This document shows positions 3,921-40,219 of a DNA stretch of 64,000 bases, in pieces; the stretch's first letter is position 1, and each line of letters opens with the position of its first letter. The notes under the pieces were generated by a model. That model was not told the DNA's origin. It made no database searches and saw only the letters and a list, made by a program, of their open reading frames with translations. The position numbers and the translations under genes were made by a program. The DNA lies in the IMG/VR virus record IMGVR_UViG_3300042455_001086, positions 62,001 through 126,000 of that record; one strand, 5' to 3'.

Positions 3921-5747
3921 TCATTTTTTTTCTTTTATAATTATTTCCATAACTTTTTTTGTTTCATCGTCTGTTAAGTTATGAATATCTTTATTTTTCT
4001 CAAACCAATTTTTCATAACAGTTATAAATGGCTTTTTTGTCATTTTTGACATTCTTTTAAAACCAAAAATCTGAGCATCAATTTCTTCTGGTTGTGTGTA
4101 ATATTTAAATGAATCTGTTTCTTCTGGTTGATCCAAATCGTAAAGACTATTTAATTTTTGATAAACATGTCTTAATTCGTGTCCAACCAACTCATTTAAT
4201 TCGCCAACAATATCATAAATTAATTTTTGTTTATTTGTTGGGTTATATTTTATTTTAATTGATATTGTATCCTCATCCCTCCAATAGTCAGCATTTAATA
4301 TAAAATCGTCTATTTTTCTATCTTGTTCAATCTCCAATTCAAAACCAATTGGTATTGGTAAATCAGTAAATTCATAGAACATATTATCATCATCCAATTC
4401 TTCTGGTAGATAAAATGTTCCGTCCTCATTTTCTTTGAAAACTTTTACGACATCTCTAACGATTGTTCTAATAATATTTCTTAATTCTGATTTATTTCTT
4501 TCTAAAATAATATCATTTTTAATCTCTTCTATTTCAACAACCAAATCACCATCTCCTTTTATAACTCTATGATACATACCCTTTGGTATGAAGATCGTCT
4601 CACCTTCTTTTAATTGTTTTGGTATTTCATTATCCATTTGAAACTTCCAACCATTCGATTTTATTATTTTTACGTTTCTATCCAATTCATCAAAATGCCA
4701 TTTTAATTCATCACTATTTAAACTCTCCTTGAATAACCTTGTTTTCTTTCCGTTTTCTTTGATCTCGTCAAAAGGTAGAACATCATTTGTATTAACTTTT
4801 TTTTCTGGTAGTGGTGGGTCTAATAAAAATTTCTCGTTTAACCAATGTCTTAATTCATTCTCAACGAAAAATTCTGGAACCTCCTCATCATCTGATTTTT
4901 CTGATGCAATTTCTGCAATATATCTAGCAAACTTAACTTTTAATTTATCATCAAGCATTGTCATAAGTCCATCAGATATAAAAAATATTTTTGATAATGG
5001 GTCGTCAATTCCTAACTCACCCTCAACCAAATTAAAAATTTTCATTATTGTTTTTCCCCACCAAGTTTTATAACCGGTTGTTTCTTCAATTCCAGGTCTA
5101 AACACTTTATTAAACGCTCGTAATAATGATCCGGTAAAACCCACAATTGATAATTGTGGAAAAAACCAAGGAAGTAATCTTAATGTTGCTTTATATCCTC
5201 CTTCACCAATATGTTGATATAATCTTTTTGCTTTTGCGTTTGTTACAATTTCTTTTAACTGACCGAATGTTATTTTTCCTTGAGCTTTACAAAATTTTTT
5301 TGCGTCACAAATATTTTTGATTGCTCTTTCGGATGGTTCAATTTCTTCATTTAAACGATTATCCGTAGTATAGTCTAACTTAAATAATGGTGTTTTATTA
5401 AAATTAATTCTAATATTAAACTTATCTGGATCATATTCTATATACTGACCATCTTGTAATTGTAGAATATTTTCACCTTTTAATAAAATCAAATCTTCAA
5501 TAAAATTAGTTCTTATATTATTTGGTTCAGTATCAATAAAAAAACTAACAGTTGCTTGTGAATTTAAAAGTTCCTCTTTTGGTATGTATTTGTTGACAGA
5601 ACTTTTTGGTGTTATTGCAATACCATATAATTTAAGATTTATTTTTTTCTTATATTTTTCATAAAATAATGGTTCACACGCTTTTTTTAAAAAGGCGTTA
5701 AATAACATTATATATTTTTTATTAATAAATCTTTCGTATGGTGTCAT
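3921..5747 (-). CDS. Multidomain protein: unknown modules + cupin-like domain + HExxH metallopeptidase-like domain
   Basis: LKWHFDE...IFIPKGMYHRVIKG (cupin); GHELRHVYQ...EEIDA (zincin-like). Confidence 0.65.
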   Translation of the reverse strand: MTPYERFINKKYIMLFNAFLKKACEPLFYEKYKKKINLKLYGIAITPKSSVNKYIPKEELLNSQATVSFFIDTEPNNIRTNFIEDLILLKGENILQLQDGQYIEYDPDKFNIRINFNKTPLFKLDYTTDNRLNEEIEPSERAIKNICDAKKFCKAQGKITFGQLKEIVTNAKAKRLYQHIGEGGYKATLRLLPWFFPQLSIVGFTGSLLRAFNKVFRPGIEETTGYKTWWGKTIMKIFNLVEGELGIDDPLSKIFFISDGLMTMLDDKLKVKFARYIAEIASEKSDDEEVPEFFVENELRHWLNEKFLLDPPLPEKKVNTNDVLPFDEIKENGKKTRLFKESLNSDELKWHFDELDRNVKIIKSNGWKFQMDNEIPKQLKEGETIFIPKGMYHRVIKGDGDLVVEIEEIKNDIILERNKSELRNIIRTIVRDVVKVFKENEDGTFYLPEELDDDNMFYEFTDLPIPIGFELEIEQDRKIDDFILNADYWRDEDTISIKIKYNPTNKQKLIYDIVGELNELVGHELRHVYQKLNSLYDLDQPEETDSFKYYTQPEEIDAQIFGFKRMSKMTKKPFITVMKNWFEKNKDIHNLTDDETKKVMEIIIKEKK

Positions 5748-5753
5748 AATTAA

Positions 5754-6368
5754 TTACCAACTTCTTGATGATTTAAGTCCCAATTTTTTTCTATATCTTG
5801 AAACATTACACGCCCAGTAACCAGCTTTTGTTCTATCTTTCTTTTGATCACACTTATGACGAGCTCTAAATGATTTTGCTCTTGATTTACTTGCGTTTCT
5901 AACTCTCAAATTAGGATCACCAAAAGTTACTTTTTTAATATTACCACTTGGTGATTTAACATATACAGCAAATTTCTTTGGTCCTCCTGGTGTCCTAAAA
6001 GGACTATTTAATTTAACATTTTTTCCTCTGTGTTTTGCTTCGGTAATTGGTTCTTCCACCTCAATTGGAGCATCAAGCCAAACTTCCTCACCACTTTCAA
6101 GAATTACCTTTTTACCTAAATCACTTTCAACAATCCAAGTATCTTCTTCATTTAATTGGATTAAACCACGATTATATAATTTTCTTACTTCATTTATTAA
6201 ATTGAAATATTCATCAGAATAAATTCTAAAGATGTTTTCAGATAGTGTAATGTTATTATCCAAATGGTATTTCAAATTTTCAGACACTTTTACATTCTCA
6301 ACTAATCTCATTGAGTGTGAATATATCTCAAGTAATGATTTTCTAATTATATTTTCTAAAATTCTCAT
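5754..6368 (-). CDS. Leader + conserved basic phage domain (DUF6321-like)
   Basis: KLNSPFRTPGGPKKFAVYVK..KKVTFGDP..SFRARHKC..AGYWAC. Confidence 0.65.
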   Translation of the reverse strand: MRILENIIRKSLLEIYSHSMRLVENVKVSENLKYHLDNNITLSENIFRIYSDEYFNLINEVRKLYNRGLIQLNEEDTWIVESDLGKKVILESGEEVWLDAPIEVEEPITEAKHRGKNVKLNSPFRTPGGPKKFAVYVKSPSGNIKKVTFGDPNLRVRNASKSRAKSFRARHKCDQKKDRTKAGYWACNVSRYRKKLGLKSSRSW

Positions 6369-6437
6369 AGTTGTCGATATTTATTTGTATAAATACTTTG
6401 TATCTTAATAAATAAAACATATTTATAGTAAAATACT

Positions 6438-11917: not shown

Positions 11918-12739
11918 CTAACTTTGTTGTTGAAATCCTTGTTTCGCACCTGCAACACCTCCTTTAACGGCCGAACCAATTCTACCAAAAATATTATCAG
12001 CTTTCATTCCAAGTGCTTGTCTGATTGGTTTTTTAAGTTCTTTTGTTAGTGGGTCACCACCAAACATTTTATCTAAATTATCCATTGCTTTTTCTCTCTG
12101 GTCAGCTGGTGTATTTAAAATATATTGACCAGCCGGTGATTTAGTCCAAGTGGTAATTTTTGTTTGTGTTGCTTGATCTAATGTTGCTAAATTTGGAAAT
12201 TGTTTTAATAAATCTGGTGTTGGTGTTCCGGCTAGTTGAGCTAAAGGTTTTGCACCACCACCTACTGTTGTTCCAGTTGTTATAACTTTACTTGAGAGCG
12301 ACACACCAGATAAAGGTTTCAACTCCATTTTTTCAACTTTTGTGAATTTCAATTTACTGATTCCCTCAATTGCTTTAGGGTTTTTTGCCTCAGTCCAGTC
12401 TTTAAATTTACCTTGTTTTGCAAATTCTTTAGCTTTTGTAGATACTGGTTCTTCTACTAATTTAAAATAGTATTTATCGCCTTCTTTTTTATAATAATAG
12501 TCTTTATCTTGTGCCTGTAAAATTTGGGTTGGTACATAGTTTTTATCACCTTGTGTTTGAAATGTTACGGTTTCTTGTTTCGGTGTTCCAGTCGGAGTTG
12601 TGGTTGGTTGATTTATTACCAAATCTTCAGGTTCTCCGGCTCTAGCTATTTGTTCTGAAATAAATTCTTGTTTAATCGCATTGTGGTGCATTCCAAGAAT
12701 TCTACTTTTTTCAGCTTCTGTTATGATAAATTTTTTCAT
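11918..12739 (-). CDS. Leader-bearing hypothetical protein
   Basis: MKKFIITEAEKSRILGMH. Confidence 0.75.
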   Translation of the reverse strand: MKKFIITEAEKSRILGMHHNAIKQEFISEQIARAGEPEDLVINQPTTTPTGTPKQETVTFQTQGDKNYVPTQILQAQDKDYYYKKEGDKYYFKLVEEPVSTKAKEFAKQGKFKDWTEAKNPKAIEGISKLKFTKVEKMELKPLSGVSLSSKVITTGTTVGGGAKPLAQLAGTPTPDLLKQFPNLATLDQATQTKITTWTKSPAGQYILNTPADQREKAMDNLDKMFGGDPLTKELKKPIRQALGMKADNIFGRIGSAVKGGVAGAKQGFQQQS

Positions 12740-12776
12740 ATTTTAATTTTATTTATAAATATCATAAAGAGTTAAA

Positions 12777-12869
12777 AAAAATATTTATATTTGTAGAACA
12801 AATCAAATATCTATGAAGACAATATTTTTTATTTTCACACTTTTTATTGTTAGTTTTGTTAATTCACAA
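12777..12869 (+). repeat. 93-bp direct repeat (promoter + signal-peptide coding), copy 1; copy 2 at 14318-14410
   Basis: Two mismatches by manual alignment. Confidence 0.9.
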
Positions 12870-14282: not shown

Positions 14283-14317
14283 AATATTTTTTACAATAAA
14301 TATTAAAACAATCAAAT

Positions 14318-14773: not shown

Positions 14774-14777
14774 AATT

Positions 14778-19237: not shown

Positions 19238-19981
19238 TCAAATTGTCAGTTTTAACTTATTAACATTAACTTGTGGATAAAAATAATTAATCTCAAGATT
19301 GATTGGTTCTTTCTCATCTCTCCATCTAATATAAAAGTCACTACCAGATCCAAGATCCATTAGTTCGTCATCAGTTCTTCCTTCAAACTTTGTGTACTGC
19401 ATTGATTGGGGAATAAGATTATAATACTTATTTAATAACTCATTTAACTTATCGTTAAAGTTGTTTTCATATTCATCCTTATAAAGATTATCAACATATC
19501 TTCTTAGATACATTCCTCGTTCTCTAAGTAAATCAAACATATGTTCTTTTAAATATTCTTCTAGTTTTTTCGGCGGTGTGGTCCCGGTAATTTTATAGAA
19601 CTTATTTAAATCAATATCCATATCAACAGAAAGATATGTTCCACCTGAATTGTCGGTTGGTCTTACATTCGAAAGGTAGGGATAATGTTTTTTAATCATC
19701 TTTGATAGAATATCAAATCCTTTTTGTTTTTCATTGATTGATTCATTCATTGGTTGGGCATTCTTTTCTTCAATATCCATTTCCCCAATGATCTTTGTAT
19801 TTTCATCCAATGAATCTTTCCACACATTATATTCTTCTTCACCATTAAACTCCATTAACTTTGATTCGTAGTAATCCCCCTGGTCGTCAGTTATGTGTAG
19901 GGCAATTCCCTTTGTTATTGGCTTATCTTCTTCCAATAATAATTTGGTTAATTGTTCTTCTGTTATAATATACTTTTTCAT
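19238..19981 (-). CDS. Leader-bearing two-module hypothetical protein
   Basis: MKKYIITEEQL; internal SINE junction. Confidence 0.7.
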   Translation of the reverse strand: MKKYIITEEQLTKLLLEEDKPITKGIALHITDDQGDYYESKLMEFNGEEEYNVWKDSLDENTKIIGEMDIEEKNAQPMNESINEKQKGFDILSKMIKKHYPYLSNVRPTDNSGGTYLSVDMDIDLNKFYKITGTTPPKKLEEYLKEHMFDLLRERGMYLRRYVDNLYKDEYENNFNDKLNELLNKYYNLIPQSMQYTKFEGRTDDELMDLGSGSDFYIRWRDEKEPINLEINYFYPQVNVNKLKLTI

Positions 19982-27876: not shown

Positions 27877-28521
27877 TTAATATTCAATATCTGTTAGTTC
27901 AAACCATAAATCTTCTATTTGGTCTTCATACATATATTCCAATAAATTCATTACGGAGTCATACATATCTGATTCTTCCATAAACCCATCAATCAATAAA
28001 CCGTGTATTCCATCCATCATATAATTTAAAAATCGTGTTTTAAAATCCGAATAAGTAACTCCTGGGTGACTATGCCCTTCACTATAATATTTATAATTTT
28101 CATAAAATTCATCTTCTAAATCTTCTTTTGATACTCTCCTAAAAAGAAAATTTGCAGCATCTTTTTTATCGTATTTTGCTTCACTAATAATTGGTTCATA
28201 TCCTTCGCACTTTAGATTATCATAATATTCCTGAATTGTGTTTGAGAAAATTTCTTCAAGACCTTTGTTAATTATATTAATTTCTTCTTCTTCGGTTGAT
28301 TCATCATCATTTAAAAAGTCATAATTTGCCATTATATTAAAAATAACATCAGACATATCATCTAAAATAACACGATAAAACATATTATATCCTTCTTCCA
28401 CACCATACTTTGTTTTATAGAAACAACCATTTTGGTCCAAAAAAACATTTTGTAAAGCGTATTTTAAATCCGATACTGATATTCGTCTTAAAATATATTG
28501 TATTTCTTTTGTCATATCCAT
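27877..28521 (-). CDS. Protein with two tandem RR-family domains
   Basis: YILRRI and FLFRRV modules joined at IISE. Confidence 0.7.
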   Translation of the reverse strand: MDMTKEIQYILRRISVSDLKYALQNVFLDQNGCFYKTKYGVEEGYNMFYRVILDDMSDVIFNIMANYDFLNDDESTEEEEINIINKGLEEIFSNTIQEYYDNLKCEGYEPIISEAKYDKKDAANFLFRRVSKEDLEDEFYENYKYYSEGHSHPGVTYSDFKTRFLNYMMDGIHGLLIDGFMEESDMYDSVMNLLEYMYEDQIEDLWFELTDIEY

Positions 28522-29496: not shown

Positions 29497-30645
29497 TTAT
29501 TTACCAAAAAGTTCAGCTTCTCGTTTTCTTCTAACTTCAAGACCTGGAAATTTTCCAAACATATGTGAGCTTTCTTTTTTTAATTGTTCTTGAGCCTTTT
29601 CCATTTGACCTCTTTTTACATATTGAATAAATTCACTCATTCTAAAATTTTTAATCCCCATATTGTATATCATTGAAATCATTGCGTTATACATATTTTG
29701 TGTTATATTTGGTGTTATTCCTTTTTTTTCCCAATCATTTAATATTTTATTTAACTGGTCTTTTGATTCTTCAACATCATCTCTTAAAAGAATTTCAGCT
29801 TGGTTTTTTGTGATTGTTGTTTTACCTGGAATAATTCTATGATATTTAGGTAAGAAATTATAATTTCCACCAACATCACCTCTATTTGGATTACTAAACA
29901 CAGCGTGTCCATAACCAATTGTTTTTGCACCATCACCGATGTCATAAGCGGTTAATATTGGTTCGCCTTTATTAACGACTGAACCTTCTTCATATTTTAG
30001 ATGATCAATTAATTTATCGTCATAATTACGAATTCGTTTTTTTGTTTCTTTTAAACCACCACCAATATTGATTGGTAGTTCTGTTTTTTCTGGTTCAACT
30101 TGTTTTGGTTCTGGTAATGATTGATAACCAATAACACCTATTAAAGAATATAAAGCATATTTTAAAATCTTTTTTCTTACATTATCGTCAAGATTTTTTA
30201 TCTTTTCTTTAAGTAATTCCAAATATTTTTTAGCTTCTTCTTTTGTTTTTACCCACAAAGTTGAAAGATCTATATTTTTTTTGACATCAGTAAAATCCCA
30301 CTCAAAATCTGGTTCCCTATCTTCATTTATAAGATTTATCGACTGAATAGCCAAATTGATGTATTCTGAACTTAATTTTAAATTTTCATTTAAGTCTCTT
30401 GTGTATTTTCTAAATCTATATGGTGAGTTTTTGACTGCTGACTTTGGAAATCTGGTTCCAATACCTTGTCTTCTGGCCATTTTAAGTGTTCTTGTATATT
30501 CTTCAAGTTCTTTTTTCTTTTTCCCATCACAATGTGCTCGTTGTGAAAAACCTTTTGGGTTATCACAGTCGATTGAATCCTTATATTCTTTGGACCATTT
30601 CTCTTCTAATTCTTCTTTTAATATTTTTCTAATTAATTGTTTCAC
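29497..30645 (-). CDS. Leader + modules + GH24 phage lysozyme
   Basis: LKYEEG..AYD.GDG..TIGYGH..YNAMISMIYNMG..GLEVRRKREAELF; GTG start. Confidence 0.85.
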   Translation of the reverse strand: MKQLIRKILKEELEEKWSKEYKDSIDCDNPKGFSQRAHCDGKKKKELEEYTRTLKMARRQGIGTRFPKSAVKNSPYRFRKYTRDLNENLKLSSEYINLAIQSINLINEDREPDFEWDFTDVKKNIDLSTLWVKTKEEAKKYLELLKEKIKNLDDNVRKKILKYALYSLIGVIGYQSLPEPKQVEPEKTELPINIGGGLKETKKRIRNYDDKLIDHLKYEEGSVVNKGEPILTAYDIGDGAKTIGYGHAVFSNPNRGDVGGNYNFLPKYHRIIPGKTTITKNQAEILLRDDVEESKDQLNKILNDWEKKGITPNITQNMYNAMISMIYNMGIKNFRMSEFIQYVKRGQMEKAQEQLKKESSHMFGKFPGLEVRRKREAELFGK

Positions 30646-32480: not shown

Positions 32481-33479
32481 TTAAGCGACACTACTAACTA
32501 AATCAAACTTATCCGAATCACTTACAGCTTTTGATCTATGAAACCCAACAGCACCACCGGCATTTATATCAGCAAAATAAGTTGCGGAATCTTTTTTGTC
32601 TTTAAACTTAGGAAATGAATCACCTGACTTTCCTTTTGTTAAAAACACCACAGCAATTTCAGATGCCACATTTGGGTCATTAACTAAATCTGGATTACCA
32701 ACTAAATCTTTACCAATTAAATTACCATATTTTTCATAATTTCCTCTACCGGTCAATTGGTTGAGACCTCTTCCTCTATATTTCCAACCATCATCACCAC
32801 CTTGATTTCCAGCGGTTTTAGCATATACAACATTAAAGAATTTTTCAGGATCTTTTTTTAAGTTGGTTAATTCACTATCCGAATATTTTGCAACTCTGGA
32901 ACCAAAAATACTTTTAATTCTTGAATTTGATGTTCCGGCATATGATAGTTCTGATTTTGGTTTAAAACCCGATTCTTTTGAGATTACAGATAATATGCCA
33001 ATTTTTGCTAAAGGGTCTTTTATTCCAAATTTATTCATATGGTTAATAATTAAACCGATATTTCTTTTTTGTTCTCCGTCAAAACCACCAACTAATTTAA
33101 TATCACTATTTTTGGGTATTTGACTATCTTCTTGATCCGAACTAATACTATTTTCAAATAAAAACTTTTCTGTCAATTTCTTAATTGTTTCTAAGTCAAA
33201 ATAACCAGATTCTTCTAAATTATTTTCGGATTGGAAGTCTTTAATGGTTGATTGTGTGTTTTCGTCTAAAATCCCGTTTAACTCTATTTGTTTTTGTGTC
33301 ACAATTCTTAAAACAATTTGCATTATTCTAATCTCTTTGTTTGCACTATTTTTTGTAATCTCTTTGTTTTTACTAACCAAATCTTGATAGACCTTTATGA
33401 ATTTTTCAAATAGTTTTTTTCTATCATCATTTTCGTTGATGAGTTTTTTAAACTGGCTTTCAGTAATTACAATTTTCAT
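32481..33479 (-). CDS. Leader + peptidoglycan-binding domain + GH19 muramidase
   Basis: IKDFQSENNLEESG; KES; DGWKYRGRGLNQLTGRGNY; DLVGNPDLV. Confidence 0.85.
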   Translation of the reverse strand: MKIVITESQFKKLINENDDRKKLFEKFIKVYQDLVSKNKEITKNSANKEIRIMQIVLRIVTQKQIELNGILDENTQSTIKDFQSENNLEESGYFDLETIKKLTEKFLFENSISSDQEDSQIPKNSDIKLVGGFDGEQKRNIGLIINHMNKFGIKDPLAKIGILSVISKESGFKPKSELSYAGTSNSRIKSIFGSRVAKYSDSELTNLKKDPEKFFNVVYAKTAGNQGGDDGWKYRGRGLNQLTGRGNYEKYGNLIGKDLVGNPDLVNDPNVASEIAVVFLTKGKSGDSFPKFKDKKDSATYFADINAGGAVGFHRSKAVSDSDKFDLVSSVA

Positions 33480-33502
33480 ATTTATATAAATATACTGCTA
33501 AT

Positions 33503-33697
33503 TCAATCTTTATAATTTTTCCAGAATTTAAACAACTCTTCATCATTATATTCCTCGTTTTTATTATCCCAACCACACATATGACAAAGAAATGGATGAT
33601 TATCTTCCTTATCTTTTTTCCAAGAATGCCCACATTTACAATTTATTTCCTTTGCAAATAATTTATCGGCCTGTTTTTCGGTGATGATTATTTTCAT
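33503..33697 (-). CDS. Leader + zinc ribbon
   Basis: CKCGHSW...CHMCG. Confidence 0.7.
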   Translation of the reverse strand: MKIIITEKQADKLFAKEINCKCGHSWKKDKEDNHPFLCHMCGWDNKNEEYNDEELFKFWKNYKD

Positions 33698-34194
33698 TTC
33701 TTTAATCTATCAATTACTTCTTCTTGAAAGAATGTTTGGATTTCAGCATCACTATTTTCCTTTTCTAAAATATCTTTTAATCTAATATCTTCGTCATTTA
33801 ATACACTATAAAAATCATAGTCTATCAAATAACCTCTTTTGTCTGTTACAATTACACCCAAAAATTCATCACCATTAAATGTGATTTCACCATAGTATTC
33901 TATTTCATCACCCTTATCCATTTCTTCGGAAAATTCAAATCTAAATGGTCTTCCTTTTAAATTATATTTAAATCTCATTCCCTCTCTTTCATCAATATCA
34001 TAAATGTCGTCGTCGTTAAAAATAAAGTCTTCCGGATCACCACCTCTTTCTGTGTGTTTTTTGAATGACTTCAACATATCTTTTTCGAATGGTTTTAATT
34101 CCTCACCCTTCTTCATTTTTGAATACAAATCCAATACTTCGTCAAAATTTTCTGACAACATTTTATATTGACTTTCTGTTATTATTATTTTCAT
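33694..34194 (-). CDS. Leader-bearing acidic protein
   Basis: MKIIITESQY. Confidence 0.75.
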   Translation of the reverse strand: MKIIITESQYKMLSENFDEVLDLYSKMKKGEELKPFEKDMLKSFKKHTERGGDPEDFIFNDDDIYDIDEREGMRFKYNLKGRPFRFEFSEEMDKGDEIEYYGEITFNGDEFLGVIVTDKRGYLIDYDFYSVLNDEDIRLKDILEKENSDAEIQTFFQEEVIDRLKK

Positions 34195-35048
34195 AAATTA
34201 TTAAAATTACCTTTTTTTATTTTATTATCATTTAGGATAAAACATTTGTTATTAGTGTCTATTTTATAGTTTTTGTTTGGGAATGAAACATAATTACCAG
34301 TTTTAATATCAACTAACATAATATTACCAACAGATAATCCAAGATAATTTTTTGGCATCGGTGTGTTTAATATTAATTTTCCATCTTCTTCTGACATTCC
34401 GGTTAGTTCTTTAACTTGAAAACTTTTTCCATTAATCATAAGGTCAATTCCGTGATCTCTATCTTGTCTGGAACCTGGAGGAAAATACTTTATCTCGTAT
34501 TTGGAGTTTTTTAATTTATCAATAACATATTTTTCAGTAACACTACCCTTATTATAGGTATTCATATTGGTCCTAATTAATTCTTTTAAAACCGGACCAT
34601 CCTTTAGTAATCTTTCTTTATTATCGATTAACCAACTATAAAACTCTTTTGGTGTTTCTCCTTTATTTTCTTTTTTAAAAGTAGTTAATAATCTTTCTTT
34701 AACAAATTTGTGCCCACCAAAATAATTTAGAATTGACCAACTTGTTAGATCATTAAGTGGATATATATCAACAATTCCATATTTACTTTTATCTTCATTC
34801 CAATCTAAATTATCTTTATATATCTCATATAAAACTGTATTTAATAATTTAGCAAATCTTCTATCTCCTTGGATAAACTCAACATTTAAATTTTTTGAAT
34901 CATTATCTTCCGAATGTATAATATCGATATAACCTTTTAAATTTTCTTCATTTGTATTTTCACTAAAATCAATATCGATTTGACTTTCGGTCAAACCCAT
35001 AAGTTTCAAACTTCTTTTTATTTCGTTAATTATGATTTTATCCATCAT
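34191..35048 (-). CDS. Putative PD-(D/E)xK nuclease-fold protein
   Basis: TEKYV...DHGIDL.INGKSFQVK. Confidence 0.5.
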   Translation of the reverse strand: MMDKIIINEIKRSLKLMGLTESQIDIDFSENTNEENLKGYIDIIHSEDNDSKNLNVEFIQGDRRFAKLLNTVLYEIYKDNLDWNEDKSKYGIVDIYPLNDLTSWSILNYFGGHKFVKERLLTTFKKENKGETPKEFYSWLIDNKERLLKDGPVLKELIRTNMNTYNKGSVTEKYVIDKLKNSKYEIKYFPPGSRQDRDHGIDLMINGKSFQVKELTGMSEEDGKLILNTPMPKNYLGLSVGNIMLVDIKTGNYVSFPNKNYKIDTNNKCFILNDNKIKKGNFNNL

Positions 35049-35722
35049 TCAAAATCTTCTTCTTTTAAAATTAGTGGCTCACCAATTTCTGTTACTTGTT
35101 CGACCCAGTTATGATATAAATATCCATTATTATCGGAGTCTAACTTCATTGTACCGAACCCACCAACACCTTCGTTCCAATCATCTGTTTCCAAAACTTC
35201 TGAAATCATAAAATAAATTTCCTGTTGGAAAGTTTTTATATTGTGTTCTTTATTATTGTAGGTAATTTTATAACTATCAAACTCATTTTGCATTCCATTA
35301 TAATCAATTATTAATTCATCAATTGACAAATCTTTCATAAATTCAAATAATGGTTGTGAATATCTAAGCTCTTCCCAACCAAACCTATGATTATCTTTTG
35401 TGTGTTTATACACATAATACTTTGGTGTTAAAAGAATTTCTCTTGTTTTCGGATTTATCGTAACATCAACCCAAAAAGAACCATCTTTTTTGTCGGTATT
35501 GTTATAAAGTTTTTGACCAAAATATGAGATTATTTTATGAATAAATTCATCAAATATATCAATGAGACTAAACCTAAATGTATGACGCGAAGTCCAAAAT
35601 GTTGGGTAATAGTCAATCTCATCACCAAACATATCAACATTCTTTCCAATAGAACCAATAGGATTTAAATAAGCCATTAACGCCTTGAATGTTCTTTTAT
35701 TTATAATTGTAGTATTACTCAC
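35045..35722 (-). CDS. DUF6878-like paralog 5 (degenerate)
   Basis: Same architecture as neighbours; WNEGVGGFG. Confidence 0.45.
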   Translation of the reverse strand: MSNTTIINKRTFKALMAYLNPIGSIGKNVDMFGDEIDYYPTFWTSRHTFRFSLIDIFDEFIHKIISYFGQKLYNNTDKKDGSFWVDVTINPKTREILLTPKYYVYKHTKDNHRFGWEELRYSQPLFEFMKDLSIDELIIDYNGMQNEFDSYKITYNNKEHNIKTFQQEIYFMISEVLETDDWNEGVGGFGTMKLDSDNNGYLYHNWVEQVTEIGEPLILKEEDFE

Positions 35723-36410
35723 TAAATGAATCTTGTGTTACTTTTATTTCTATTGGTCCCAAATCGCTTTCCTCTACATTCCAATAATGATCGTGATTAA
35801 TCCGATCTTTAGTAATAGTAAAACTACCTTGAGATCCTTCATTTATTTCCCAACCACCATATTCACTTAATAAATTATAACAAATATTTTCAATCTCATT
35901 TGGAACATCGCCGCTTTGACCATTTTTAGTTGTATACTCACTATTAATGAACCCGCTATCTCCACCGCCCTCATAACTAACAATCATATCATCTATATTA
36001 AGTTCGGTCAATATTTTATCTATTTCTAAAAATTTTTCATACATAGAATCACCTTCTTCATAGTCATCTTTATCGTGGTAGTTTCCACTTTCTTGAGTAT
36101 CATAATAGCGATATTCAAGGTCTTCAAAAATTATTGTTTCATTTACGACATCTATCAGACCGTAAATTCTATAATAACTAGACATACCGTCAACATCAAC
36201 ACTACTTAACCCTTCATCAACACACTTTTCAGCATAAATATTTATTATATCTTGAATTATGTCTTCAATAACTTCAGCGACACTCAATAATTCAGTGTGA
36301 ATAATAACACTACCAACATAACCATCTTCACCGACTTCAACTTCAAAAGCCACATCTTTTAATTTGGCACTTTTAAAATAAGTCATTATTAATTTAAATT
36401 TCTTTTTCAT
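35715..36410 (-). CDS. DUF6878-like paralog 4
   Basis: YEGGGDSG...GGWEINEGSQG; start moved to MKKKF. Confidence 0.6.
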   Translation of the reverse strand: MKKKFKLIMTYFKSAKLKDVAFEVEVGEDGYVGSVIIHTELLSVAEVIEDIIQDIINIYAEKCVDEGLSSVDVDGMSSYYRIYGLIDVVNETIIFEDLEYRYYDTQESGNYHDKDDYEEGDSMYEKFLEIDKILTELNIDDMIVSYEGGGDSGFINSEYTTKNGQSGDVPNEIENICYNLLSEYGGWEINEGSQGSFTITKDRINHDHYWNVEESDLGPIEIKVTQDSFSE

Positions 36411-36411
36411 C

Positions 36412-37110
36412 CTATTTAAAATCTTCAATATTATCCAAAGTAATTTCCAAATTCATTCCAGAATCTTCATATTCTTCTTTTTTTATATTACCCATCACTA
36501 TTATATCATCACCCCAAATTCTACAACTTAATTCGGCACCAGGACCATCATTCCAATATCTATCTCCTGTTATTGTCACCATCAAACCATATCCTATATC
36601 CCATAATCTTTGATCAAGTTCTTCTGTTATTTTTTTTCTACGATTATCAACTTCAAAATCAAACGAGTCACCCTCACCAAATCTTCCATTGATTCCAAAA
36701 TCAAAATATGCGGTATCTGGATACTCACTGTATAAATAATCAATTCCATATTGAACTTCTCTTTTCATACCGACATACTGAAATTCTCTTGAGAATGATT
36801 CACTTTTTTCTACTTTATGAGTTCCTTGAAAAACTAATCTATTTTCCTGTGGAAAAATATCAATATATAAAAACCAATAATCGTCATTATCTAACACAAT
36901 ATATTTTCTAAATTCATAATAAAAATGATCAATTAGTTCTTCCAATATTGTTTCAATAAATGACGGAATTTCAATATTTATATTTCCATCTATTAAAAAT
37001 TTACGGTCCCAATGTTCAATATAGTTTCGATCAAGTTCAACACGAGTTTGGACTATTTTACTTCTCAAGCCTCTTAAAAACCCAAATAATATTTTTAGTT
37101 TGTCTTTCAT
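36412..37110 (-). CDS. DUF6878-like paralog 3 (degenerate)
   Basis: MKDKLKILFGF; WNDGPGA. Confidence 0.45.
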   Translation of the reverse strand: MKDKLKILFGFLRGLRSKIVQTRVELDRNYIEHWDRKFLIDGNINIEIPSFIETILEELIDHFYYEFRKYIVLDNDDYWFLYIDIFPQENRLVFQGTHKVEKSESFSREFQYVGMKREVQYGIDYLYSEYPDTAYFDFGINGRFGEGDSFDFEVDNRRKKITEELDQRLWDIGYGLMVTITGDRYWNDGPGAELSCRIWGDDIIVMGNIKKEEYEDSGMNLEITLDNIEDFK

Positions 37111-37113
37111 TAT

Positions 37114-37827
37114 TTAAAAATCATCTAGTGTTATGATTATATTCATATCTGTCATATCATAATCTTCACTTCTAACATTGAAATCCAGTTGAATTGAGTT
37201 ATTTCTTTGAATTGTGATCTTTCCGGCAGCTCCTCTTTCATCTTTCCAAAAGCTATCAACTCTTTCTTTCATTATTTTATCCAAAAGTATTGCCCACGGT
37301 TCAAGTCTTAAAGTAACCGGTGTATCGTCTTCTTCAAAATCTTTAATATCTAAACCACGCCATTCCGCATCAAACTCATATGCTACTGTTTCTGTTTCTT
37401 TCCATAAATCACCATTTTCAAATGTCATATTTATTGCATCCAAAGTCTCTTGTGATAATTTATTTTCAGTTGGGAGACCAGGAGTTGTTAAATCAATATT
37501 ATATTTGTATGAATTTTCATATAAATATTTACATTCACTTTTAAATTTTATTTTATTTTTCCAAGGATAAATTGTAATATACAATGTCCAAAAATCATCT
37601 TCATCATAATTATTAAAACGATGAAATTTTCTCATCATACTTGATATAACTTCTTCCAAAATTTCTTCAATTATTTTTGGTGATTTAAAACCTTTACCTT
37701 TTTTGGTTGTAAAAATATGATCCCATTGTTCAAGACCATCATATATATAATTCATATATGTTGTAATCTCTTCTGTTTTAAGGCCTCTAAAAAACCCAAA
37801 TAATATTTTTAATTTTTCTTCCATCAA
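37114..37827 (-). CDS. DUF6878-like paralog 2 (degenerate)
   Basis: MEEKLKILFGF; WKDERGAAG. Confidence 0.45.
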   Translation of the reverse strand: MMEEKLKILFGFFRGLKTEEITTYMNYIYDGLEQWDHIFTTKKGKGFKSPKIIEEILEEVISSMMRKFHRFNNYDEDDFWTLYITIYPWKNKIKFKSECKYLYENSYKYNIDLTTPGLPTENKLSQETLDAINMTFENGDLWKETETVAYEFDAEWRGLDIKDFEEDDTPVTLRLEPWAILLDKIMKERVDSFWKDERGAAGKITIQRNNSIQLDFNVRSEDYDMTDMNIIITLDDF

Positions 37828-38498
37828 TCTTCAAACATATCAACAGTTAATTCAAATTTTTCATCACACCAATTCATTTCTCTCATAATCCATTCGTGTG
37901 AAATTACAATTTCCAAATTGTTATTTAATTCAATTGTTCCAGTGGAACCATCATCAATTTCCCAACCACCATAGGCATTTTCTAAATTATCGTAAAGTGT
38001 ATTCCAAATTAATTCATTGTCAGGTTCTCTGGATCCCCATTGGATATTTGTATCTTCACCATCAATTGTTATTGAGTTAATATCTCCATCATCCCCACCT
38101 CCACTATATCTTGCTTCAATTATTTCAACTCCAGTTCTTTTAAAATATTCTTCAAGTTTTGGATTTTCTAATTTTCTTTCATAAGTTTCAGCTTGATTTA
38201 TATATTCTTCATATTTTAACTCAATATACATTGAGTTTGTTTTTGGTTCCACAAATAAATAAACACTGTAATAGTCTGTCTCACTATAACAATTATCAAA
38301 TAATTCACTATTTATTTCGTTATAATAATATTCTACAACATCAGTAGCAAAATCAAATATCATTTCTGGTAATCCTGAAATATTTGAGCTAGCCCCCCAT
38401 TCATATTCAATATTCTCATTAGGAGCATTCCAAACAAACTGAACTGTTTTATTAAGTGGTTTTAAAAATTTTAAAAGTGCTAAAAATTTCTTTTTCAT
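37824..38498 (-). CDS. DUF6878-like paralog 1
   Basis: YSGGGDDG...GGWEIDDGSTG. Confidence 0.6.
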   Translation of the reverse strand: MKKKFLALLKFLKPLNKTVQFVWNAPNENIEYEWGASSNISGLPEMIFDFATDVVEYYYNEINSELFDNCYSETDYYSVYLFVEPKTNSMYIELKYEEYINQAETYERKLENPKLEEYFKRTGVEIIEARYSGGGDDGDINSITIDGEDTNIQWGSREPDNELIWNTLYDNLENAYGGWEIDDGSTGTIELNNNLEIVISHEWIMREMNWCDEKFELTVDMFED

Positions 38499-38510
38499 AG
38501 TAATAAATAC

Positions 38511-38864
38511 TTAGTCATCGAATTTAAGATCAAGTGTTCTTATCATCCACATAGGTTTTTCTTTGGCTTCAATTGCTTTTATCCATTCTTTTGCTGATGG
38601 AATGTAATTGTAGCAATCCTCTTTGACATGGTCTTCAAGACAGTATCTAGTATATACAATTTTACCATCACTATTTGTGAAATGAGGACCAAAGATTTTT
38701 TCGGCTTCAAAAATACCTTCACTATGATGTCTCCACATTCTATGAAGTGAATGTCCATACCAGGCCTTCGTTGCGTCCATCCATTCGTGTAAATGAATAT
38801 AATCTTCCCATTTGCCACCATATTTTTTTTGATTGGACTTTGAGTGTAATATTGGGTGCGCCAT
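38511..38864 (-). CDS. DUF6915-like His-rich protein
   Basis: MAHPILHS..YGG..EDY..LHEWMD..HR..RHHSEGIF..HVKED. Confidence 0.75.
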   Translation of the reverse strand: MAHPILHSKSNQKKYGGKWEDYIHLHEWMDATKAWYGHSLHRMWRHHSEGIFEAEKIFGPHFTNSDGKIVYTRYCLEDHVKEDCYNYIPSAKEWIKAIEAKEKPMWMIRTLDLKFDD

Positions 38865-38926
38865 AATTATCTGTTTTTTTAAATAAATATAGATTTCATA
38901 ATCTATTTTTGTAGTATTTATATATA

Positions 38927-40219
38927 ATGAAAGAACTCATACGGAACATATTAATGGAAGAAATATCAAACCCGGAACAAATAACAAGAAAATATTTATC
39001 CAGATTAAATCTTGAACCTTGGGAAGATAAAAAATACAATATGCAATATCTTGTTGAACCAAAATCAAGAAGGATAATTTTTCTTTCGGTTCCAAATGAT
39101 TTTGAATGTTCGATTCTTGTTCTTGAGCACTTTTATACTATGTTAAAGATGTTTTTCAAAAATGATGAGCAAGAAATGACATATTTTGTTTATGATTACC
39201 TAAAAGAAAACGGATTAAACCTACCATTTCACAAAGAAGATTTTTGTATTTCAAGTAGTGAAGATACAGGAATTGTAAGTAATGAAGATGGTGATGAACC
39301 GATTAAAAAATATAATTTAAGTGAAGGAAGAAAGCCAAGTTTGGAAAATAAATTTGTTAAATCCTGGCTTTCAAAATTTGAGAATCTAAAAAAATATAAA
39401 AGTGAGGATGATAGATACATATATCTTGCTGGTAAATCTGGACAAATTGTTGTTAAACTAGACACACAAATAAATGAAACTTACGTAAATTCCGAATTAA
39501 TATTTAAACCTATTGAAAATATTATTGGATTAACAAACGCAAGAAGAAAAATAATTGGTTGGTTACTTGATACATATCATTTACCTGGAATGGGCTATGT
39601 TCTTTTTAGAAGTCAAGAAAGTTTGGGAAAGATTGGTGGTGATGCAATTCCATATAATCAAGAAGCAATCAACGAATCGGAAGAGAAATCAAAACTTGAA
39701 AGGTTCTTTATTAAAAGGTGGGATGATCAAAAAAAACAAGGTATAACACCAAATATAATGAATTTACATTTGTTTGGTCTTCAATCACATAGAGATGAAA
39801 TCTTACAATATTTTATAAAATATATGAATCTTAAAGATGTCAATAGTCGAGCTGAGGCTTTTAAAAGTTATTTACTTTCACAAGTATTCACAGAAAAACA
39901 AATAAAATTAATGGCAGAATTTTTTGAACGAGGAAAGATTACTGTCAAATTTAATAATGTCGAGTTTTTTGAAAATGAAAAATATAATGCTTTTGACTTG
40001 GATATAGAATTTGTTGTTTTGGATGGCTCTTTTTATAGTGAAGACATTGGCGAAAATGTAAATTTCTCATCTGGTGATATACCTTTTGATGATATGATGG
40101 AATATTTTGAATTTAAAGGAGTCGTTGAAAATGTGCTTGAAGGGTTTGTAGCTGATGTTTTAGAATCTTTTGGGTATGACACAGACGAAGATTTCGCTAG
40201 TATTAATATTAAATGGTAA
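38927..40219 (+). CDS. Leader-bearing three-module hypothetical protein
   Basis: MKELIRNILMEE; junctions NLSE and AINE. Confidence 0.75.
   Translation: MKELIRNILMEEISNPEQITRKYLSRLNLEPWEDKKYNMQYLVEPKSRRIIFLSVPNDFECSILVLEHFYTMLKMFFKNDEQEMTYFVYDYLKENGLNLPFHKEDFCISSSEDTGIVSNEDGDEPIKKYNLSEGRKPSLENKFVKSWLSKFENLKKYKSEDDRYIYLAGKSGQIVVKLDTQINETYVNSELIFKPIENIIGLTNARRKIIGWLLDTYHLPGMGYVLFRSQESLGKIGGDAIPYNQEAINESEEKSKLERFFIKRWDDQKKQGITPNIMNLHLFGLQSHRDEILQYFIKYMNLKDVNSRAEAFKSYLLSQVFTEKQIKLMAEFFERGKITVKFNNVEFFENEKYNAFDLDIEFVVLDGSFYSEDIGENVNFSSGDIPFDDMMEYFEFKGVVENVLEGFVADVLESFGYDTDEDFASINIKW

What the first reader, a model, noticed from the sequence alone, without database searches (positions are those of the whole stretch)
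3921..40219. Mosaic proteins whose domain boundaries coincide with [ILV]-x-E: possible polyproteins
Seen: 3921 (RLNE|module, IKE|cupin, IILE|HExxH domain); 5754 (PITE|AKHRGK basic domain); 19238 (SINE|); 27877 (IISE|second RR domain); 29497 (ELEE|KWSKEYKDSIDC module, LNE|, LKE|lysozyme); 38927 (NLSE|, AINE|). Inference: cargo modules are strung together and released by the same maturation protease, so one gene delivers several effectors. Caveat: xxE is common in these E-rich proteins.
Basis: inference. Interest (0 to 1): 0.6.

Follow-up and report, generated by a model that had tools for sequence, protein, structure and literature searches.

The report
Protease-site joints between shuffled phage protein modules
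In this uncultured 257-kb T4-like phage and its many metagenomic relatives, small protein modules are shuffled between genes and are nearly always joined by a short [Ile/Leu/Val]-x-Glu motif that matches the cutting site of the phage's own head-maturation protease, so one gene may supply several separately released proteins, although no cutting or packaging has been shown.

Summary
All 11 cited motifs exist. The window lies in a complete 257-kb, 30% GC T4-like phage genome that encodes a gp21-type (Peptidase_S77) prohead protease and a gp23-type capsid protein. Four of the six proteins have 45 to more than 1,000 metagenomic homologues each, with reshuffled module orders. Homology breakpoints carry [ILV]xE at about twice the expected rate and [ILV][NST]E at 3.6 times; control motifs do not. 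At module starts, 338 of 404 distinct internal contexts carry the motif against 71 expected.

The same module appears after an internal "..LNE|S" or after a short N-terminal leader ending in the motif. In a related contig the HExxH module of p3921 is a separate gene with the leader MGFKNLILE|D. T4's own gp21 sites (gp23 FLTE|A, gp24 LLRE|S) have the same form.

Nine of the 11 sites are supported as conserved joints. IKE331 lies inside the cupin fold, and LKE200 is not conserved.

Cleavage by the head protease is the best explanation, but it is only inferred (about 0.5). No virion or cleavage data exist, p3921 lacks a leader, and some leader-bearing proteins look like lysis enzymes. I class it as a new variant of known kinds: T4 capsid-targeted internal proteins and polyvalent proteins.

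The parts
3921..5747 (-). p3921, 608 aa, with four modules. A is residues 1-134 (5346-5747). B is 135 to about 320 (4788-5345) and has a hydrophobic core. C is a cupin, 322-409 (4521-4784). D is an HExxH zincin-like module, 417-608 (3924-4499).
   Evidence: More than 837 homologues show the architectures A-B-C-D, B-C-D, A-B-C, A-B-D, B-D, A-C-D, A-B-X-C-D and A'-A-B-X-C. The cupin fold matches at Z 11 over residues 322-414. C occurs as a stand-alone gene in Melnitz and immuto phages. B occurs as a stand-alone ORF in a 642-kb phage. D occurs as a stand-alone gene in L013.
5346..5357 (-). A|B joint, RLNE134|EIEPS.
   Evidence: The motif is kept within 3 residues in 92% of homologues. All 44 distinct internal contexts of module B carry [ILV]xE. 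B-first proteins have short leaders ending in the motif, such as MKFNQNILE|SIEPS and MDMVIYE|EIEPS. pLDDT falls below 50 exactly from residue 134.
4500..4508 (-). C|D joint, ILE416|RNKS.
   Evidence: It lies in the low-confidence coil at 410-418. All 51 distinct contexts of module D carry [ILV]xE. It corresponds to the N-terminal leader MGFKNLILE|D of the stand-alone D gene in L013.
4755..4763 (-). IKE331.
   Evidence: It lies in cupin strand b1, residues 327-331. The cupin fold and the stand-alone cupins begin at about 322-323. It is kept in 43% of homologues. The true B|C linker, residues 308-326, usually lacks any motif and reads '..KKDDD|LPFEEV'.
5754..6368 (-). p5754, 204 aa. It has an N-terminal part with a leader-like start (MRILE|NIIRKSLLE|), the joint VEE|PITE110| (6039-6047), and a basic C-terminal module at residues 111-204 (5757-6038).
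   Evidence: PHROG 7595 matches residues 107-189. The C-terminal module occurs alone in many podophages. The residues before the module are LDE| in immuto, LEE| in HTVC008M and LEE| in CRP-6; pT24 has none. In CRP-6 the module is fused to an XkdF-type putative head protease. TATAAATA lies 59 nt upstream.
19238..19981 (-). p19238, 247 aa. It has the leader MKKYIITE|, an N module (to about residue 72), the joint SINE84| (19730-19738), and a C module at residues 85-247 (19241-19729).
   Evidence: 45 homologues were found. N-only proteins (72-79 aa) and C-only proteins (150-190 aa) both exist. The C-only forms either have the leader (MRNYIITE|GQLNRLLTE|D..) or start directly at the module. Joints in full-length forms include VVKE|, TLQE|S, TINE|S and KINE|S.
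27877..28521 (-). p27877, 214 aa. It has the joint IISE114| (28180-28188) followed by an 'RR' module at residues 115-214 (27880-28179).
   Evidence: Residues 109-210 are 47% identical (E 1e-28) to the C-terminal module of lysozyme homologue P0145, with ISE|A aligned to IIE|T. In other homologues the same module follows PLNE|S or INE|S. The similarity between the two halves of p27877 is weak (E 0.03).
29497..30645 (-). p29497, 382 aa, GTG start. Its parts are: leader with LKE11|ELEE15| (30601-30645); a Cys-containing KWS module; LEE49| (30499-30507); LNE87| (30385-30393); INE108| (30322-30330); a hydrophobic helix at 154-172 (30130-30186); a disordered linker containing LKE200 (30046-30054); and a GH24 lysozyme at 210-382 (29500-30018).
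   Evidence: Pfam Phage_lysozyme matches at 2.8e-19. More than 1,000 homologues of 275-639 aa were found. Breakpoints fall at q11, q83-86 and q103-111. The minimal form is MVFKISLITE|DGKTEPDM.. and C-terminal modules follow PLNE|S. E108 is invariant. LKE200 is not conserved. This is the only GH24 lysozyme in the genome.
38927..40219 (+). p38927, 430 aa. Its parts are: leader MKELIRNILME11| (38927-38959); M1 (to residue 133); joint NLSE133| (39317-39325); M2 (134-250); joint AINE250| (39668-39676); and M3 (251-430).
   Evidence: 79 homologues show the architectures M1-M2-M3, M1-M3, M2-M3 and X-M1-M2-M3. M2-first proteins begin MKKKNLNE|GRPPS. M3 also follows the leader MRDIIRQILQE|ES... M1|M3 joints read RQINE|STEMET. 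Module starts carry the motif in 51 of 52 contexts for M2 and 47 of 47 for M3.

Best explanation
The six proteins belong to a large pool of small modules, carried by uncultured (at least partly marine) T4-like phages, that are recombined freely between genes. Each module is delimited on its N-terminal side by a minimal [Ile/Leu/Val(Met)]-x-Glu motif. The commonest form is [IL]-[N/T]-E followed by S, G, N, E or A. The motif sits either at the end of a 7-15-residue N-terminal leader or in a flexible linker after another module.

The most likely mechanism is as follows. The leader acts like the T4 capsid-targeting sequence and brings the precursor into the prohead core. The phage's gp21-type serine protease (Peptidase_S77, published specificity L/I-X-E) then cuts after the Glu of the leader and of the exposed linkers, at the same time as it cuts the capsid protein. 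A multi-module precursor would thereby be converted into separate small proteins that stay in the head and are probably ejected with the DNA.

For p3921 the conserved sites predict three products: A (residues 1-134), B+cupin (135-416) and the HExxH module (417-608). For p38927 they predict three pieces besides the leader.

Shown here: the modular shuffling; the motif at joints far above chance; the equivalence of leader ends and internal joints; the presence of the protease with its catalytic motifs; and the same site form in T4 substrates.

Inferred, not shown: packaging, cleavage, ejection, and any effector function.
For: 1. The phage is T4-like.
- Peptidase_S77 matches at 80 bits. The protein aligns to T4 gp21 structure 5JBL at E 2.4e-13, keeping ELNHP and SSRGxGS (in the wild-type T4 gene these read ELNHP).
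- Gp23 matches at 214 bits.

2. Published specificity of gp21.
- gp21 cuts after L/I-X-E. A 10-residue capsid-targeting sequence is sufficient for packaging. Asp at P1 blocks processing (PMC9026906).
- At the joints studied here, [ILV]xD is not enriched or is depleted.

3. Form of T4's own sites.
- gp23 reads FLTE65|AEIG and gp24 reads LLRE10|STTT. gp22 and gp68 contain ALSE|S, DLTE|S, TITE|S and SINE|N.
- This phage's capsid protein has HLINE59|ATSEG at the region homologous to the T4 site.

4. Enrichment at boundaries defined independently of the motif.
- Breakpoints: 87 of 170 against 44.9 expected for [ILV]xE; 53 against 14.7 for [ILV][NST]E, peaking at offset -1; controls at expectation.
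- Module starts: 338 of 404 against 71 expected.
- The motif recurs at more than 20 junction types across four families.

5. Leader ends and internal joints are interchangeable.
- The same module follows a leader or an internal joint: MNLKKIIKE|SIDDFDW against DQLNE|SKDDFDW, and MRDIIRQILQE|ES.. against EAINE|SE...
- D is fused in the window after IILE|R, but is a separate gene with the leader MGFKNLILE|D in L013.

6. The joints look accessible.
- They lie in predicted coil or low-confidence linkers.
- They are often followed by Gly- or Pro-rich sequence, so they are not helix caps.

7. Weaker support.
- The T4 late-promoter consensus TATAAATA lies upstream of the p5754-p3921 operon and of several leader genes.
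- The p5754 basic module is fused to an XkdF-type head protease in podophage CRP-6.
Against: - There are no virion proteomics, N-terminal data or expression data for this phage or any relative. Literature searches found none.
- p3921 has no [ILV]xE in its first 133 residues and p27877 has none in its first 40, so they lack a T4-type targeting leader.
- Some homologues start directly at a module with no leader, for example MSKHIEPS.. and MDKYRKAGF...
- The B|cupin joint, a genuine shuffling point, usually has no motif.
- Many conserved [ILV]xE sites lie inside folded modules, so the motif alone cannot specify cleavage.
- Two leader-bearing proteins are peptidoglycan hydrolases with architectures that recall lysis enzymes: GH24 with a hydrophobic helix, and PG_binding+GH19. 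Lysis enzymes would not be expected inside capsids.
- About a third of all ORFs in the genome (111 of 324) have the motif at residues 5-18, against roughly a quarter expected. That would mean an unusually large cargo repertoire.
- The enrichment statistics treat related sequences as independent.
Confidence: 0.5

Rival explanations
1. The motif is a conserved module delimiter that is never cut. Under this view the proteins function as full-length multidomain proteins in the infected cell. The [ILV]-x-E would be kept either because it belongs to a standard linker or N-terminal element needed for folding or for some other interaction, or because fusions of neighbouring leader-bearing genes carry the end of the leader with them.
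For: - Gene fusion and fission at exactly the leader/joint position is documented.
- Leaders occur on proteins that look cytoplasmic or lytic: GH19+PG_binding, an NTN-hydrolase-like protein, and GH24 with a hydrophobic helix.
- Modules also exist without leaders and in phages that lack S77.
- No cleavage has been demonstrated.
Against: - Internal joints keep only the minimal hydrophobic-x-Glu triplet, with a P2 preference (N/T/S) that differs from the leaders (K/R/M/Q). They do not keep the amphipathic body of the leader, so they are not simple relics.
- The triplet is held under selection while its flanks vary. Asp cannot replace Glu, and aromatic residues rarely replace I/L/V. That pattern fits protease specificity (PMC9026906) better than a generic linker.
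- A helix N-cap role is unlikely. Many joints are followed by G/P-rich, non-helical sequence, and in the p3921 model the motif lies 3-6 residues before the next helix.
Confidence: 0.27
2. The joints are cleaved by a protease other than the gp21-type head protease. The candidates are the zincin-like HExxH module D of p3921, acting on itself or in trans as proposed for the metallopeptidase domains of polyvalent proteins, and the NTN-hydrolase-like protein at window 28526-29473.
For: - Module D has HELRH on a long helix after a helix plus a 3-4-strand sheet, followed by further helices containing QPEE. This is the topology described for polyvalent-protein metallopeptidases, which Iyer et al. proposed release neighbouring domains (PMC5512222).
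- There is a weak hit to eCIS_core at the HExxH (E 0.25).
Against: - The same joint motif occurs in the p29497, p38927 and p19238 families, which have no peptidase module.
- The motif equals the known S77 specificity and the capsid-protein site.
- D was not confirmed as a zincin by any significant sequence or fold match.
Confidence: 0.1
3. The coincidence is chance. [ILV]xE is simply common in these Glu-, Ile- and Leu-rich proteins, so some sites fall near boundaries.
For: The motif occurs about once every 20-45 residues in the six proteins. Two of the cited sites (IKE331, LKE200) are indeed explained this way.
Against: Breakpoint and module-start tests give 2- to 11-fold excess over expectation, with matched control motifs at or below expectation. 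The motif recurs at more than 20 different junction types.
Confidence: 0.02

Closest known systems
T4 internal proteins (IPI, IPII, IPIII, Alt) with a capsid-targeting sequence, processed by the gp21 prohead protease
   Same: - The phage is T4-like and has an S77 protease.
- It has short N-terminal leaders ending in L/I-x-E, for example MVFKISLITE| and MGFKNLILE|, compared with the 10-residue T4 targeting sequence (PMC9026906).
- The sequence after the leader is highly variable.
- The site form matches T4 gp23 and gp24.
   Different: - In T4 the packaged proteins lose terminal propeptides only. Here the motif also lies between two to five independently shuffled modules, which implies a polyprotein-like precursor.
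- There are dozens of candidate genes here, against four in T4.
- No sequence homology to the T4 internal proteins was found.
- Packaging and cleavage are unproven.
Polyvalent proteins of phages and conjugative elements (Iyer, Burroughs, Anand, de Souza, Aravind 2017, PMC5512222)
   Same: These are multi-module proteins with combinatorial architectures, predicted to be delivered with the DNA. They often include lysozyme and HExxH metallopeptidase domains, and release of domains by proteolysis has been proposed.
   Different: - The proteins here are much smaller (200-700 aa, with modules of 30-190 aa), and nearly all modules are uncharacterised.
- The proposed processing enzyme is the head-maturation protease acting on an explicit, conserved linker motif, not an embedded metallopeptidase.
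- No defined cleavage motif was noticed in the passages of that paper that I read.
Head and inner-body or ejection proteins of phiKZ-like giant phages (phiKZ gp175, SPN3US gp245)
   Same: A gp21-related protease cuts many head proteins after Glu at a three-residue motif. Precursors carry multiple sites and there are many packaged ejection proteins (PMC9026906, PMC10052503).
   Different: - The motif there is S/A-X-E, not I/L/V-x-E.
- The cleavages mainly remove and fragment long N-terminal propeptides. They do not separate shuffled functional modules.
- The phage lineage is different.
Viral polyproteins (for example in picornaviruses and retroviruses)
   Same: One open reading frame would be cut by a virus-encoded protease at short linker motifs to yield several mature proteins.
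   Different: There is no evolutionary relation. The cutting here would happen inside a dsDNA phage prohead, and the products would be accessory cargo rather than replication or structural proteins.

Membership tests
Substrates of a T4 gp21-type (Peptidase_S77) prohead protease / CTS-bearing internal head proteins | The phage encodes an S77 prohead protease with catalytic residues. | tested here: met
   PF03420 matches at 80 bits at genome 11928-12353(-). The protein aligns to T4 gp21 structure 5JBL at E 2.4e-13, keeping ELNHP and SSRGxGS.
Substrates of a T4 gp21-type (Peptidase_S77) prohead protease / CTS-bearing internal head proteins | An L/I-X-E motif in an exposed, flexible segment at the place where mature products begin. 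| tested here: met
   Nine of 11 cited sites lie at independently defined boundaries. The sites fall in coil or low-pLDDT linkers. Enrichment is shown. Two sites, IKE331 and LKE200, fail.
Substrates of a T4 gp21-type (Peptidase_S77) prohead protease / CTS-bearing internal head proteins | A short N-terminal capsid-targeting sequence (about 7-10 aa in T4) ending in the cleavage motif. | tested here: inconclusive
   A leader is present by sequence in p5754 (MRILE|), p19238 (MKKYIITE|), p29497 (..ILKE|ELEE|) and p38927 (MKELIRNILME|). It is absent from p3921 (first site at residue 134) and p27877 (first site at residue 43). The targeting function itself cannot be tested with these tools.
Substrates of a T4 gp21-type (Peptidase_S77) prohead protease / CTS-bearing internal head proteins | The protein is found in proheads or virions and is cut after the Glu. 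| not testable with these tools
   No proteomic data were found for this phage or its relatives.
Polyvalent proteins (PMC5512222) | Several unrelated modules in one polypeptide, with combinatorial architectures across phages. | tested here: met
Polyvalent proteins (PMC5512222) | A zincin-like HExxH metallopeptidase hub domain. | tested here: inconclusive
   Module D of p3921 has HELRH and a compatible predicted topology. The only sequence hint is a sub-threshold eCIS_core hit (E 0.25). Fold searches of the whole model were dominated by the cupin. The other five proteins have no such domain.
Polyvalent proteins (PMC5512222) | Delivery into the host together with the DNA. | not testable with these tools
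   This needs virion and ejection experiments.
SAR-type (signal-anchor-release) endolysin, considered for p29497 | An N-terminal weakly hydrophobic transmembrane helix directly preceding the muralytic domain. | tested here: inconclusive
   A hydrophobic helix at residues 154-172 precedes the GH24 domain at 210-382. However, 150 residues of other modules lie in front of the helix, and about 70 residues do so in the minimal homologues. This is the only GH24 lysozyme in the genome.

The most novel reading that the evidence does not exclude
Uncultured jumbo T4-like phages, at least some of them marine, may use a combinatorial cargo grammar. Under this reading, dozens of small modules are tagged for the prohead by short leaders and strung together in changing orders through minimal [IL]-[NT]-E-[SG] joints. 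The head-maturation protease would cut at these joints, so single genes would load sets of separate proteins into the capsid for ejection into the host. The same three-residue joint would serve both as the cleavage site and as a recombination-tolerant seam, letting modules move between 'own leader' and 'internal' positions.
Probability: 0.4. Interest if true: 0.75.

Novelty: new variant of a known kind. Interest (0 to 1): 0.62.

Why it matters
If the joints are cut, these T4-like phages package far more kinds of protein than the T4 model suggests, and they make them from polyprotein-like precursors. That would turn hundreds of metagenomic "hypothetical proteins" into a defined class of candidate injected proteins whose mature boundaries can be predicted. 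It would also show how a three-residue protease site lets phages shuffle cargo modules quickly. Finally, it would supply natural rules for loading foreign proteins into T4-type capsids. Even if the joints are not cut, the delimiter motif is a practical tool for splitting these orphan proteins into their true modules for structure and function studies.

Tried and rejected
- Megablast of the region against known phages found nothing. The closest cultured relatives match only at protein level: Flavobacterium phage immuto, Tenacibaculum phage pT24, Methylophilales phage Melnitz and Pelagibacter phage HTVC008M.
- All-against-all BLAST within the genome gave no paralogues for the six proteins. Without composition correction it gave only noise, so "mosaic" could not be shown from this genome alone.
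- Peptide-pattern scans of viral contigs found nothing for p38927 and one relative for p29497.
- Pfam and PHROGs identify only the lysozyme and one unnamed PHROG. Scans of single modules gave nothing significant.
- Conservation of each site across the p3921 family does not separate joint sites from interior sites, because interior sites lie in conserved cores. It only showed that LPE315 (4%) and IKE331 (43%) are poorly kept.
- The helix N-cap or hydrophobic-staple explanation was considered and rejected. Many joints are followed by Gly/Pro-rich, non-helical sequence, and the next helix starts 3-6 residues later.
- DNA-level microhomology as the cause of the motif was rejected. P3 alternates among I, L, V and M, and P2 ranges over N, T, S, K, R, Q, I, F, Y, H and M, so only the protein-level pattern is kept.
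- The late-promoter scan gave only weak support, because TATAAATA is common in a 30% GC genome.
- The similarity between the two halves of p27877 is marginal (E 0.03).
- No protease-substrate complex prediction was run. A short flexible substrate is a poor case for that test, and a negative result would not count as evidence.

Full report
**Context**

The window is bases 62,001-126,000 of a single 257,166-bp virus record with 30% GC. IMG/VR rates the record as complete. The record encodes a Peptidase_S77 prohead protease of the T4 gp21 type (80 bits). That protein aligns to T4 gp21 structure 5JBL at E 2.4e-13 and keeps the ELNHP and SSRGxGS segments. The record also encodes a gp23-type major capsid protein (214 bits; PDB matches to T4 gp23 and gp24). 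It is therefore a jumbo T4-like phage.

No nucleotide-level relative exists among sequenced phages. The nearest cultured phages match only at protein level. They are Flavobacterium phage immuto, Tenacibaculum phage pT24, Methylophilales phage Melnitz and Pelagibacter phage HTVC008M.

**The observation**

[ILV]xE is common in these proteins, with 5-19 sites per protein, so position alone proves little. I therefore defined domain boundaries without using the motif.

For p3921 (608 aa), a word-indexed search found more than 837 homologues. Their lengths and coverage show free recombination of four modules plus an extra module X. The modules are A (1-134), B (135 to about 320), C (about 322-409) and D (417-608). 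The observed architectures are A-B-C-D, B-C-D, A-B-C, A-B-D, B-D, A-C-D, A-B-X-C-D, A-B-X-X-C and A'-A-B-X-C.

- C exists as a stand-alone gene of 85-89 aa in Melnitz and immuto.
- B exists as a stand-alone 223-aa ORF in a 642-kb phage.
- In a related 102-kb contig, D is a separate 199-aa gene.
- AlphaFold2 gives a confident A domain, with pLDDT below 50 starting exactly at residue 134. It shows unstructured linkers at 308-326 and 410-418, a cupin at 324-409 and a confident D domain.
- Fold searches confirm the cupin, aligned over residues 322-414 at Z about 11.

The other proteins behave the same way.

- p29497 has more than 1,000 homologues of 275-639 aa, with breakpoints at q11, q83-86 and q103-111 and with extra N- and C-terminal modules.
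- p38927 has 79 homologues, with breakpoints at q126-140 and q242.
- p19238 has 45 homologues that split at q78-88.
- The basic C-terminal module of p5754 begins at about 104-110.
- The second half of p27877 is 47% identical to the C-terminal module of a lysozyme homologue, starting at residue 109.

Nine of the 11 cited sites coincide with these boundaries. Two do not.

- IKE331 lies in the first strand of the cupin, about 8 residues inside the module, and is kept in only 43% of homologues.
- LKE200 lies in a non-conserved linker that is not a shuffling point. Motifs occur there at about chance level.

E108 is invariant.

**Is it more than chance?**

I ran two tests on the retrieved families.

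The first test used homology breakpoints. These are places where a BLAST alignment between two non-redundant proteins begins while both proteins extend at least 25 residues upstream, with no collinear upstream alignment. This definition does not use the motif.

| Motif | Observed (of 170) | Expected | Naive binomial p |
|---|---|---|---|
| [ILV]xE, P1 within -8..+3 | 87 | 44.9 | about 6e-12 |
| [ILV][NST]E | 53 | 14.7 | about 6e-17 |
| [ILV]xD (control) | 37 | 37.9 | |
| [ILV]xK (control) | 34 | 44.6 | |
| [AGS]xE (control) | 22 | 21.1 | |
| [FWY]xE (control) | 10 | 24.5 | |
| [KR]xE (control) | 12 | 20.1 | |

The offsets peak sharply at -1, that is, with the Glu immediately before the start of homology. 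An earlier, cruder version of this test gave the same direction.

The second test located twelve modules by iterated HMM search and recorded the residues just upstream of each internal occurrence. Of 404 distinct contexts, 338 had [ILV]xE, against 71 expected, and 247 had [ILV][NST]E, against 22 expected. [ILV]xD (25 against 64) and [FWY]xE (2 against 35) were depleted.

Three modules fell short in this second test.

- The cupin start is a true exception, with 10 of 50 contexts and a typical sequence "..KKDDD|LPFEEV".
- The RR module scored low because my module definition included the motif.
- The p19238 C module scored low because the inferred start was offset from the motif.

The p-values overstate significance because the sequences are related. 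Even so, the motif recurs at more than 20 different junction types: A|B, A|C, A|X, A'|A, B|X, X|X, X|C, B|D, C|D, leader|B, lysozyme|RR, and others. Chance is excluded as a general explanation.

**What the joints look like**

The consensus has four features:

- a hydrophobic P3 (I, L or V, occasionally M);
- a variable P2 with a preference for N, T or S;
- an invariant Glu at P1;
- a small or polar P1' (S, G, N, E or A).

The motif usually follows a short acidic or polar stretch. Examples are DNRLNE|EIEPS, GEQLNE|GQYDYED, PKTINE|SKTLLE|N, ENSINE|NNLPF, GEPLNE|SKN, KKYNLSE|GRKPS and QEAINE|SEEKS.

The same modules also occur directly after short N-terminal leaders that end in the same triplet:

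- MKFNQNILE|SIEPS;
- MVFKISLITE|DGKTEPDM;
- MNLKKIIKE|SIDDFDW, compared with the internal DQLNE|SKDDFDW;
- MKKKNLNE|GRPPS;
- MRDIIRQILQE|ESGGD, compared with the internal EAINE|SEEKS.

The clearest case is module D. It is fused in the window after ..IKNDIILE|RNK, but in contig L013 it is a separate gene starting MGFKNLILE|DGRR. Leader ends and internal joints are therefore interchangeable.

**Link to the protease**

Published work on T4 shows the following (PMC9026906):

- gp21 cuts after Glu in the short motif L/I-X-E;
- the first 10 residues of IPIII are sufficient to target proteins into the prohead;
- Asp at P1 blocks processing;
- Alt is trimmed at both ends.

Reading T4's own genes confirms the site form. 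gp23 has FLTE65|AEIG and gp24 has LLRE10|STTT. gp22 and gp68 contain ALSE|S, DLTE|S, TITE|S and SINE|N.

This phage's capsid protein has LKE43, LYE50 and HLINE59|ATSEG in the region homologous to the T4 cleavage site. Its protease has LILIE17, where T4 gp21 has LLIE9.

The joints thus have the form of bona fide gp21 sites. They discriminate Glu from Asp and aliphatic from aromatic P3 residues. They also sit in predicted flexible segments. That combination makes the head protease the most economical reader of the motif.

**Mechanism proposed**

This mechanism is inferred. Leader-bearing precursors would be incorporated into the prohead core. The S77 protease would remove the leader and cut the exposed joints. 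The separated modules would remain in the head and leave with the DNA.

From the conserved sites, p3921 would yield A, B+cupin and the HExxH module. p38927 would yield three pieces besides the leader. p29497 would yield several small basic pieces plus the conserved core, which begins DREPDFEW.. and comprises a hydrophobic helix and the lysozyme.

Two further observations give weak support.

- The T4 late-promoter consensus lies 59 nt upstream of the p5754-p3921 operon and upstream of several other leader genes. TATAAATA is four-fold enriched upstream of ORFs genome-wide.
- The p5754 basic module is fused to an XkdF-type putative head protease in Roseobacter podophage CRP-6.

**Reasons for caution**

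- Nothing shows packaging or cleavage. No proteome of any relative was found.
- p3921 and p27877 lack a leader. Module A contains no [ILV]xE at all in 133 residues.
- Some homologues begin directly at a module with no leader.
- The B|cupin seam usually has no motif.
- Many conserved motifs are buried in domain cores.
- Leaders occur on proteins that might be lysis enzymes. These are the only GH24 lysozyme, which has an internal hydrophobic helix, and a PG_binding+GH19 protein. An NTN-hydrolase-like protein also carries a leader.
- 56 of the window's 123 ORFs carry the motif at residues 5-18. If all were cargo, the repertoire would be unusually large.

**Rivals**

1. The motif is a delimiter that is conserved but never cut, or is inherited through gene fusion. 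This is plausible. However, the joints keep only the minimal protease-like triplet, with their own P2 preference, and the triplet is under selection in otherwise variable linkers.
2. A different enzyme does the cutting, notably the zincin-like module D. Iyer et al. proposed this role for the metallopeptidase domains of polyvalent proteins (PMC5512222). However, three of the families have no peptidase module, and D is not confirmed as a zincin.
3. Chance. This is rejected.

**Comparison with what is known**

The finding works like the T4 system of capsid-targeting sequence, internal proteins and gp21, and like the polyvalent-protein concept. It also resembles the extensive Glu-specific processing of head proteins in phiKZ-like phages (PMC10052503). 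It differs in one respect: the protease-type motif separates independently shuffled modules inside small proteins, across a very large family set known only from metagenomes. I found no description of this in the literature searched. I class it as a new variant of a known kind.

**Steps not run**

- No protease-substrate complex prediction was made.
- No read mapping was done, because it does not bear on proteolysis.

Noticed in passing
whole window, e.g. 21916-29473(-), 16919-17623(-), 32481-34194(-), 54717-55466(-), 11918-15303(-), 38927-40797(+): Dozens of otherwise unrelated small ORFs share a few N-terminal leader families: MNLQESIRRILREE.., MKIIITESQY.., MKKIIKLTESDLxRIV.., MKKxIITEEEKSRILGxH.. 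and MKELIRNILxE... 56 of 123 window ORFs have [ILV]xE with its Glu at residues 5-18. Genome-wide the motif is 1.7-fold enriched at residues 7-14.
   Followed up: partly
window 32481-33479 (-): This protein combines the leader MKIVITE|SQFKKLINE| with a PG_binding_1 domain and a GH19 domain. It is a second peptidoglycan hydrolase carrying a leader. It could be the true endolysin, which would argue against the leader being a capsid-targeting signal.
   Followed up: no
window 28526-29473 (-): This protein combines the leader MNLKDSIKNILRE| with an AAT/NTN-hydrolase-like domain (PF03417, just above the cut-off).
   Followed up: no
L010 (Roseobacter phage CRP-6 gp55), compared with window 5757-6038 (-): The basic C-terminal module of p5754 is fused in a podophage to an XkdF-type putative head serine protease (Peptidase_S78_2, E 2.8e-17). 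It is preceded there by LPLEE| as well. The same module is annotated 'HVA1 family protein' in other podophages and also occurs in Nitrosopumilaceae spindle-shaped viruses.
   Followed up: partly
window 5754-6368 and 3921-5747 (-); L004, L005, L011, L013: The gene order is conserved: a p5754-like gene is followed by a cupin or p3921-like gene in immuto, Melnitz, pT24 and the metagenomic contig L013. In Melnitz the p5754-like part is the C-terminus of a protein of about 650 aa.
   Followed up: partly
genome-wide; window genes 3296, 5754, 6438, 10907, 11918, 13440, 14809: The T4 late-promoter consensus TATAAATA occurs within 100 nt upstream of 26 ORFs, against 6.5 expected. These include several leader-bearing genes and two structural genes.
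   Followed up: partly
window 12813-13439 (+) and 14354-14773 (+): These paralogues have near-identical signal-peptide-like N-termini (MKTIFFIFTLFI.SFVNSQ). They are interleaved with the MKKxIITEEEKSRILG family on the opposite strand. Two more copies lie elsewhere in the genome.
   Followed up: no
window 35045-38498 (-): A tandem array of five ORFs of about 210-236 aa. The no-composition-correction BLAST links three of them (35045, 35715, 37824) and, separately, two (36412, 37114). Several start MK.K(L/F)K.L..F.
   Followed up: no
window 15383-15817 and 15843-16400 (-): Two adjacent paralogues start MPLKVDKLIASEIVLNGTEL. A third copy lies in the structural region of the genome (genome 23034-23318).
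   Followed up: no
whole record (G000): IMG/VR labels the 257-kb record as ending in inverted terminal repeats. That is unexpected for a T4-like phage and might be an assembly artefact. It was not examined.
   Followed up: no
L006 2441-3112 (+), 642-kb uncultured phage LR756502: The stand-alone homologue of module B lies between the two topoisomerase II subunit genes of a megaphage. It also begins with a leader-like MKNIIKYNHFLILE|.
   Followed up: no
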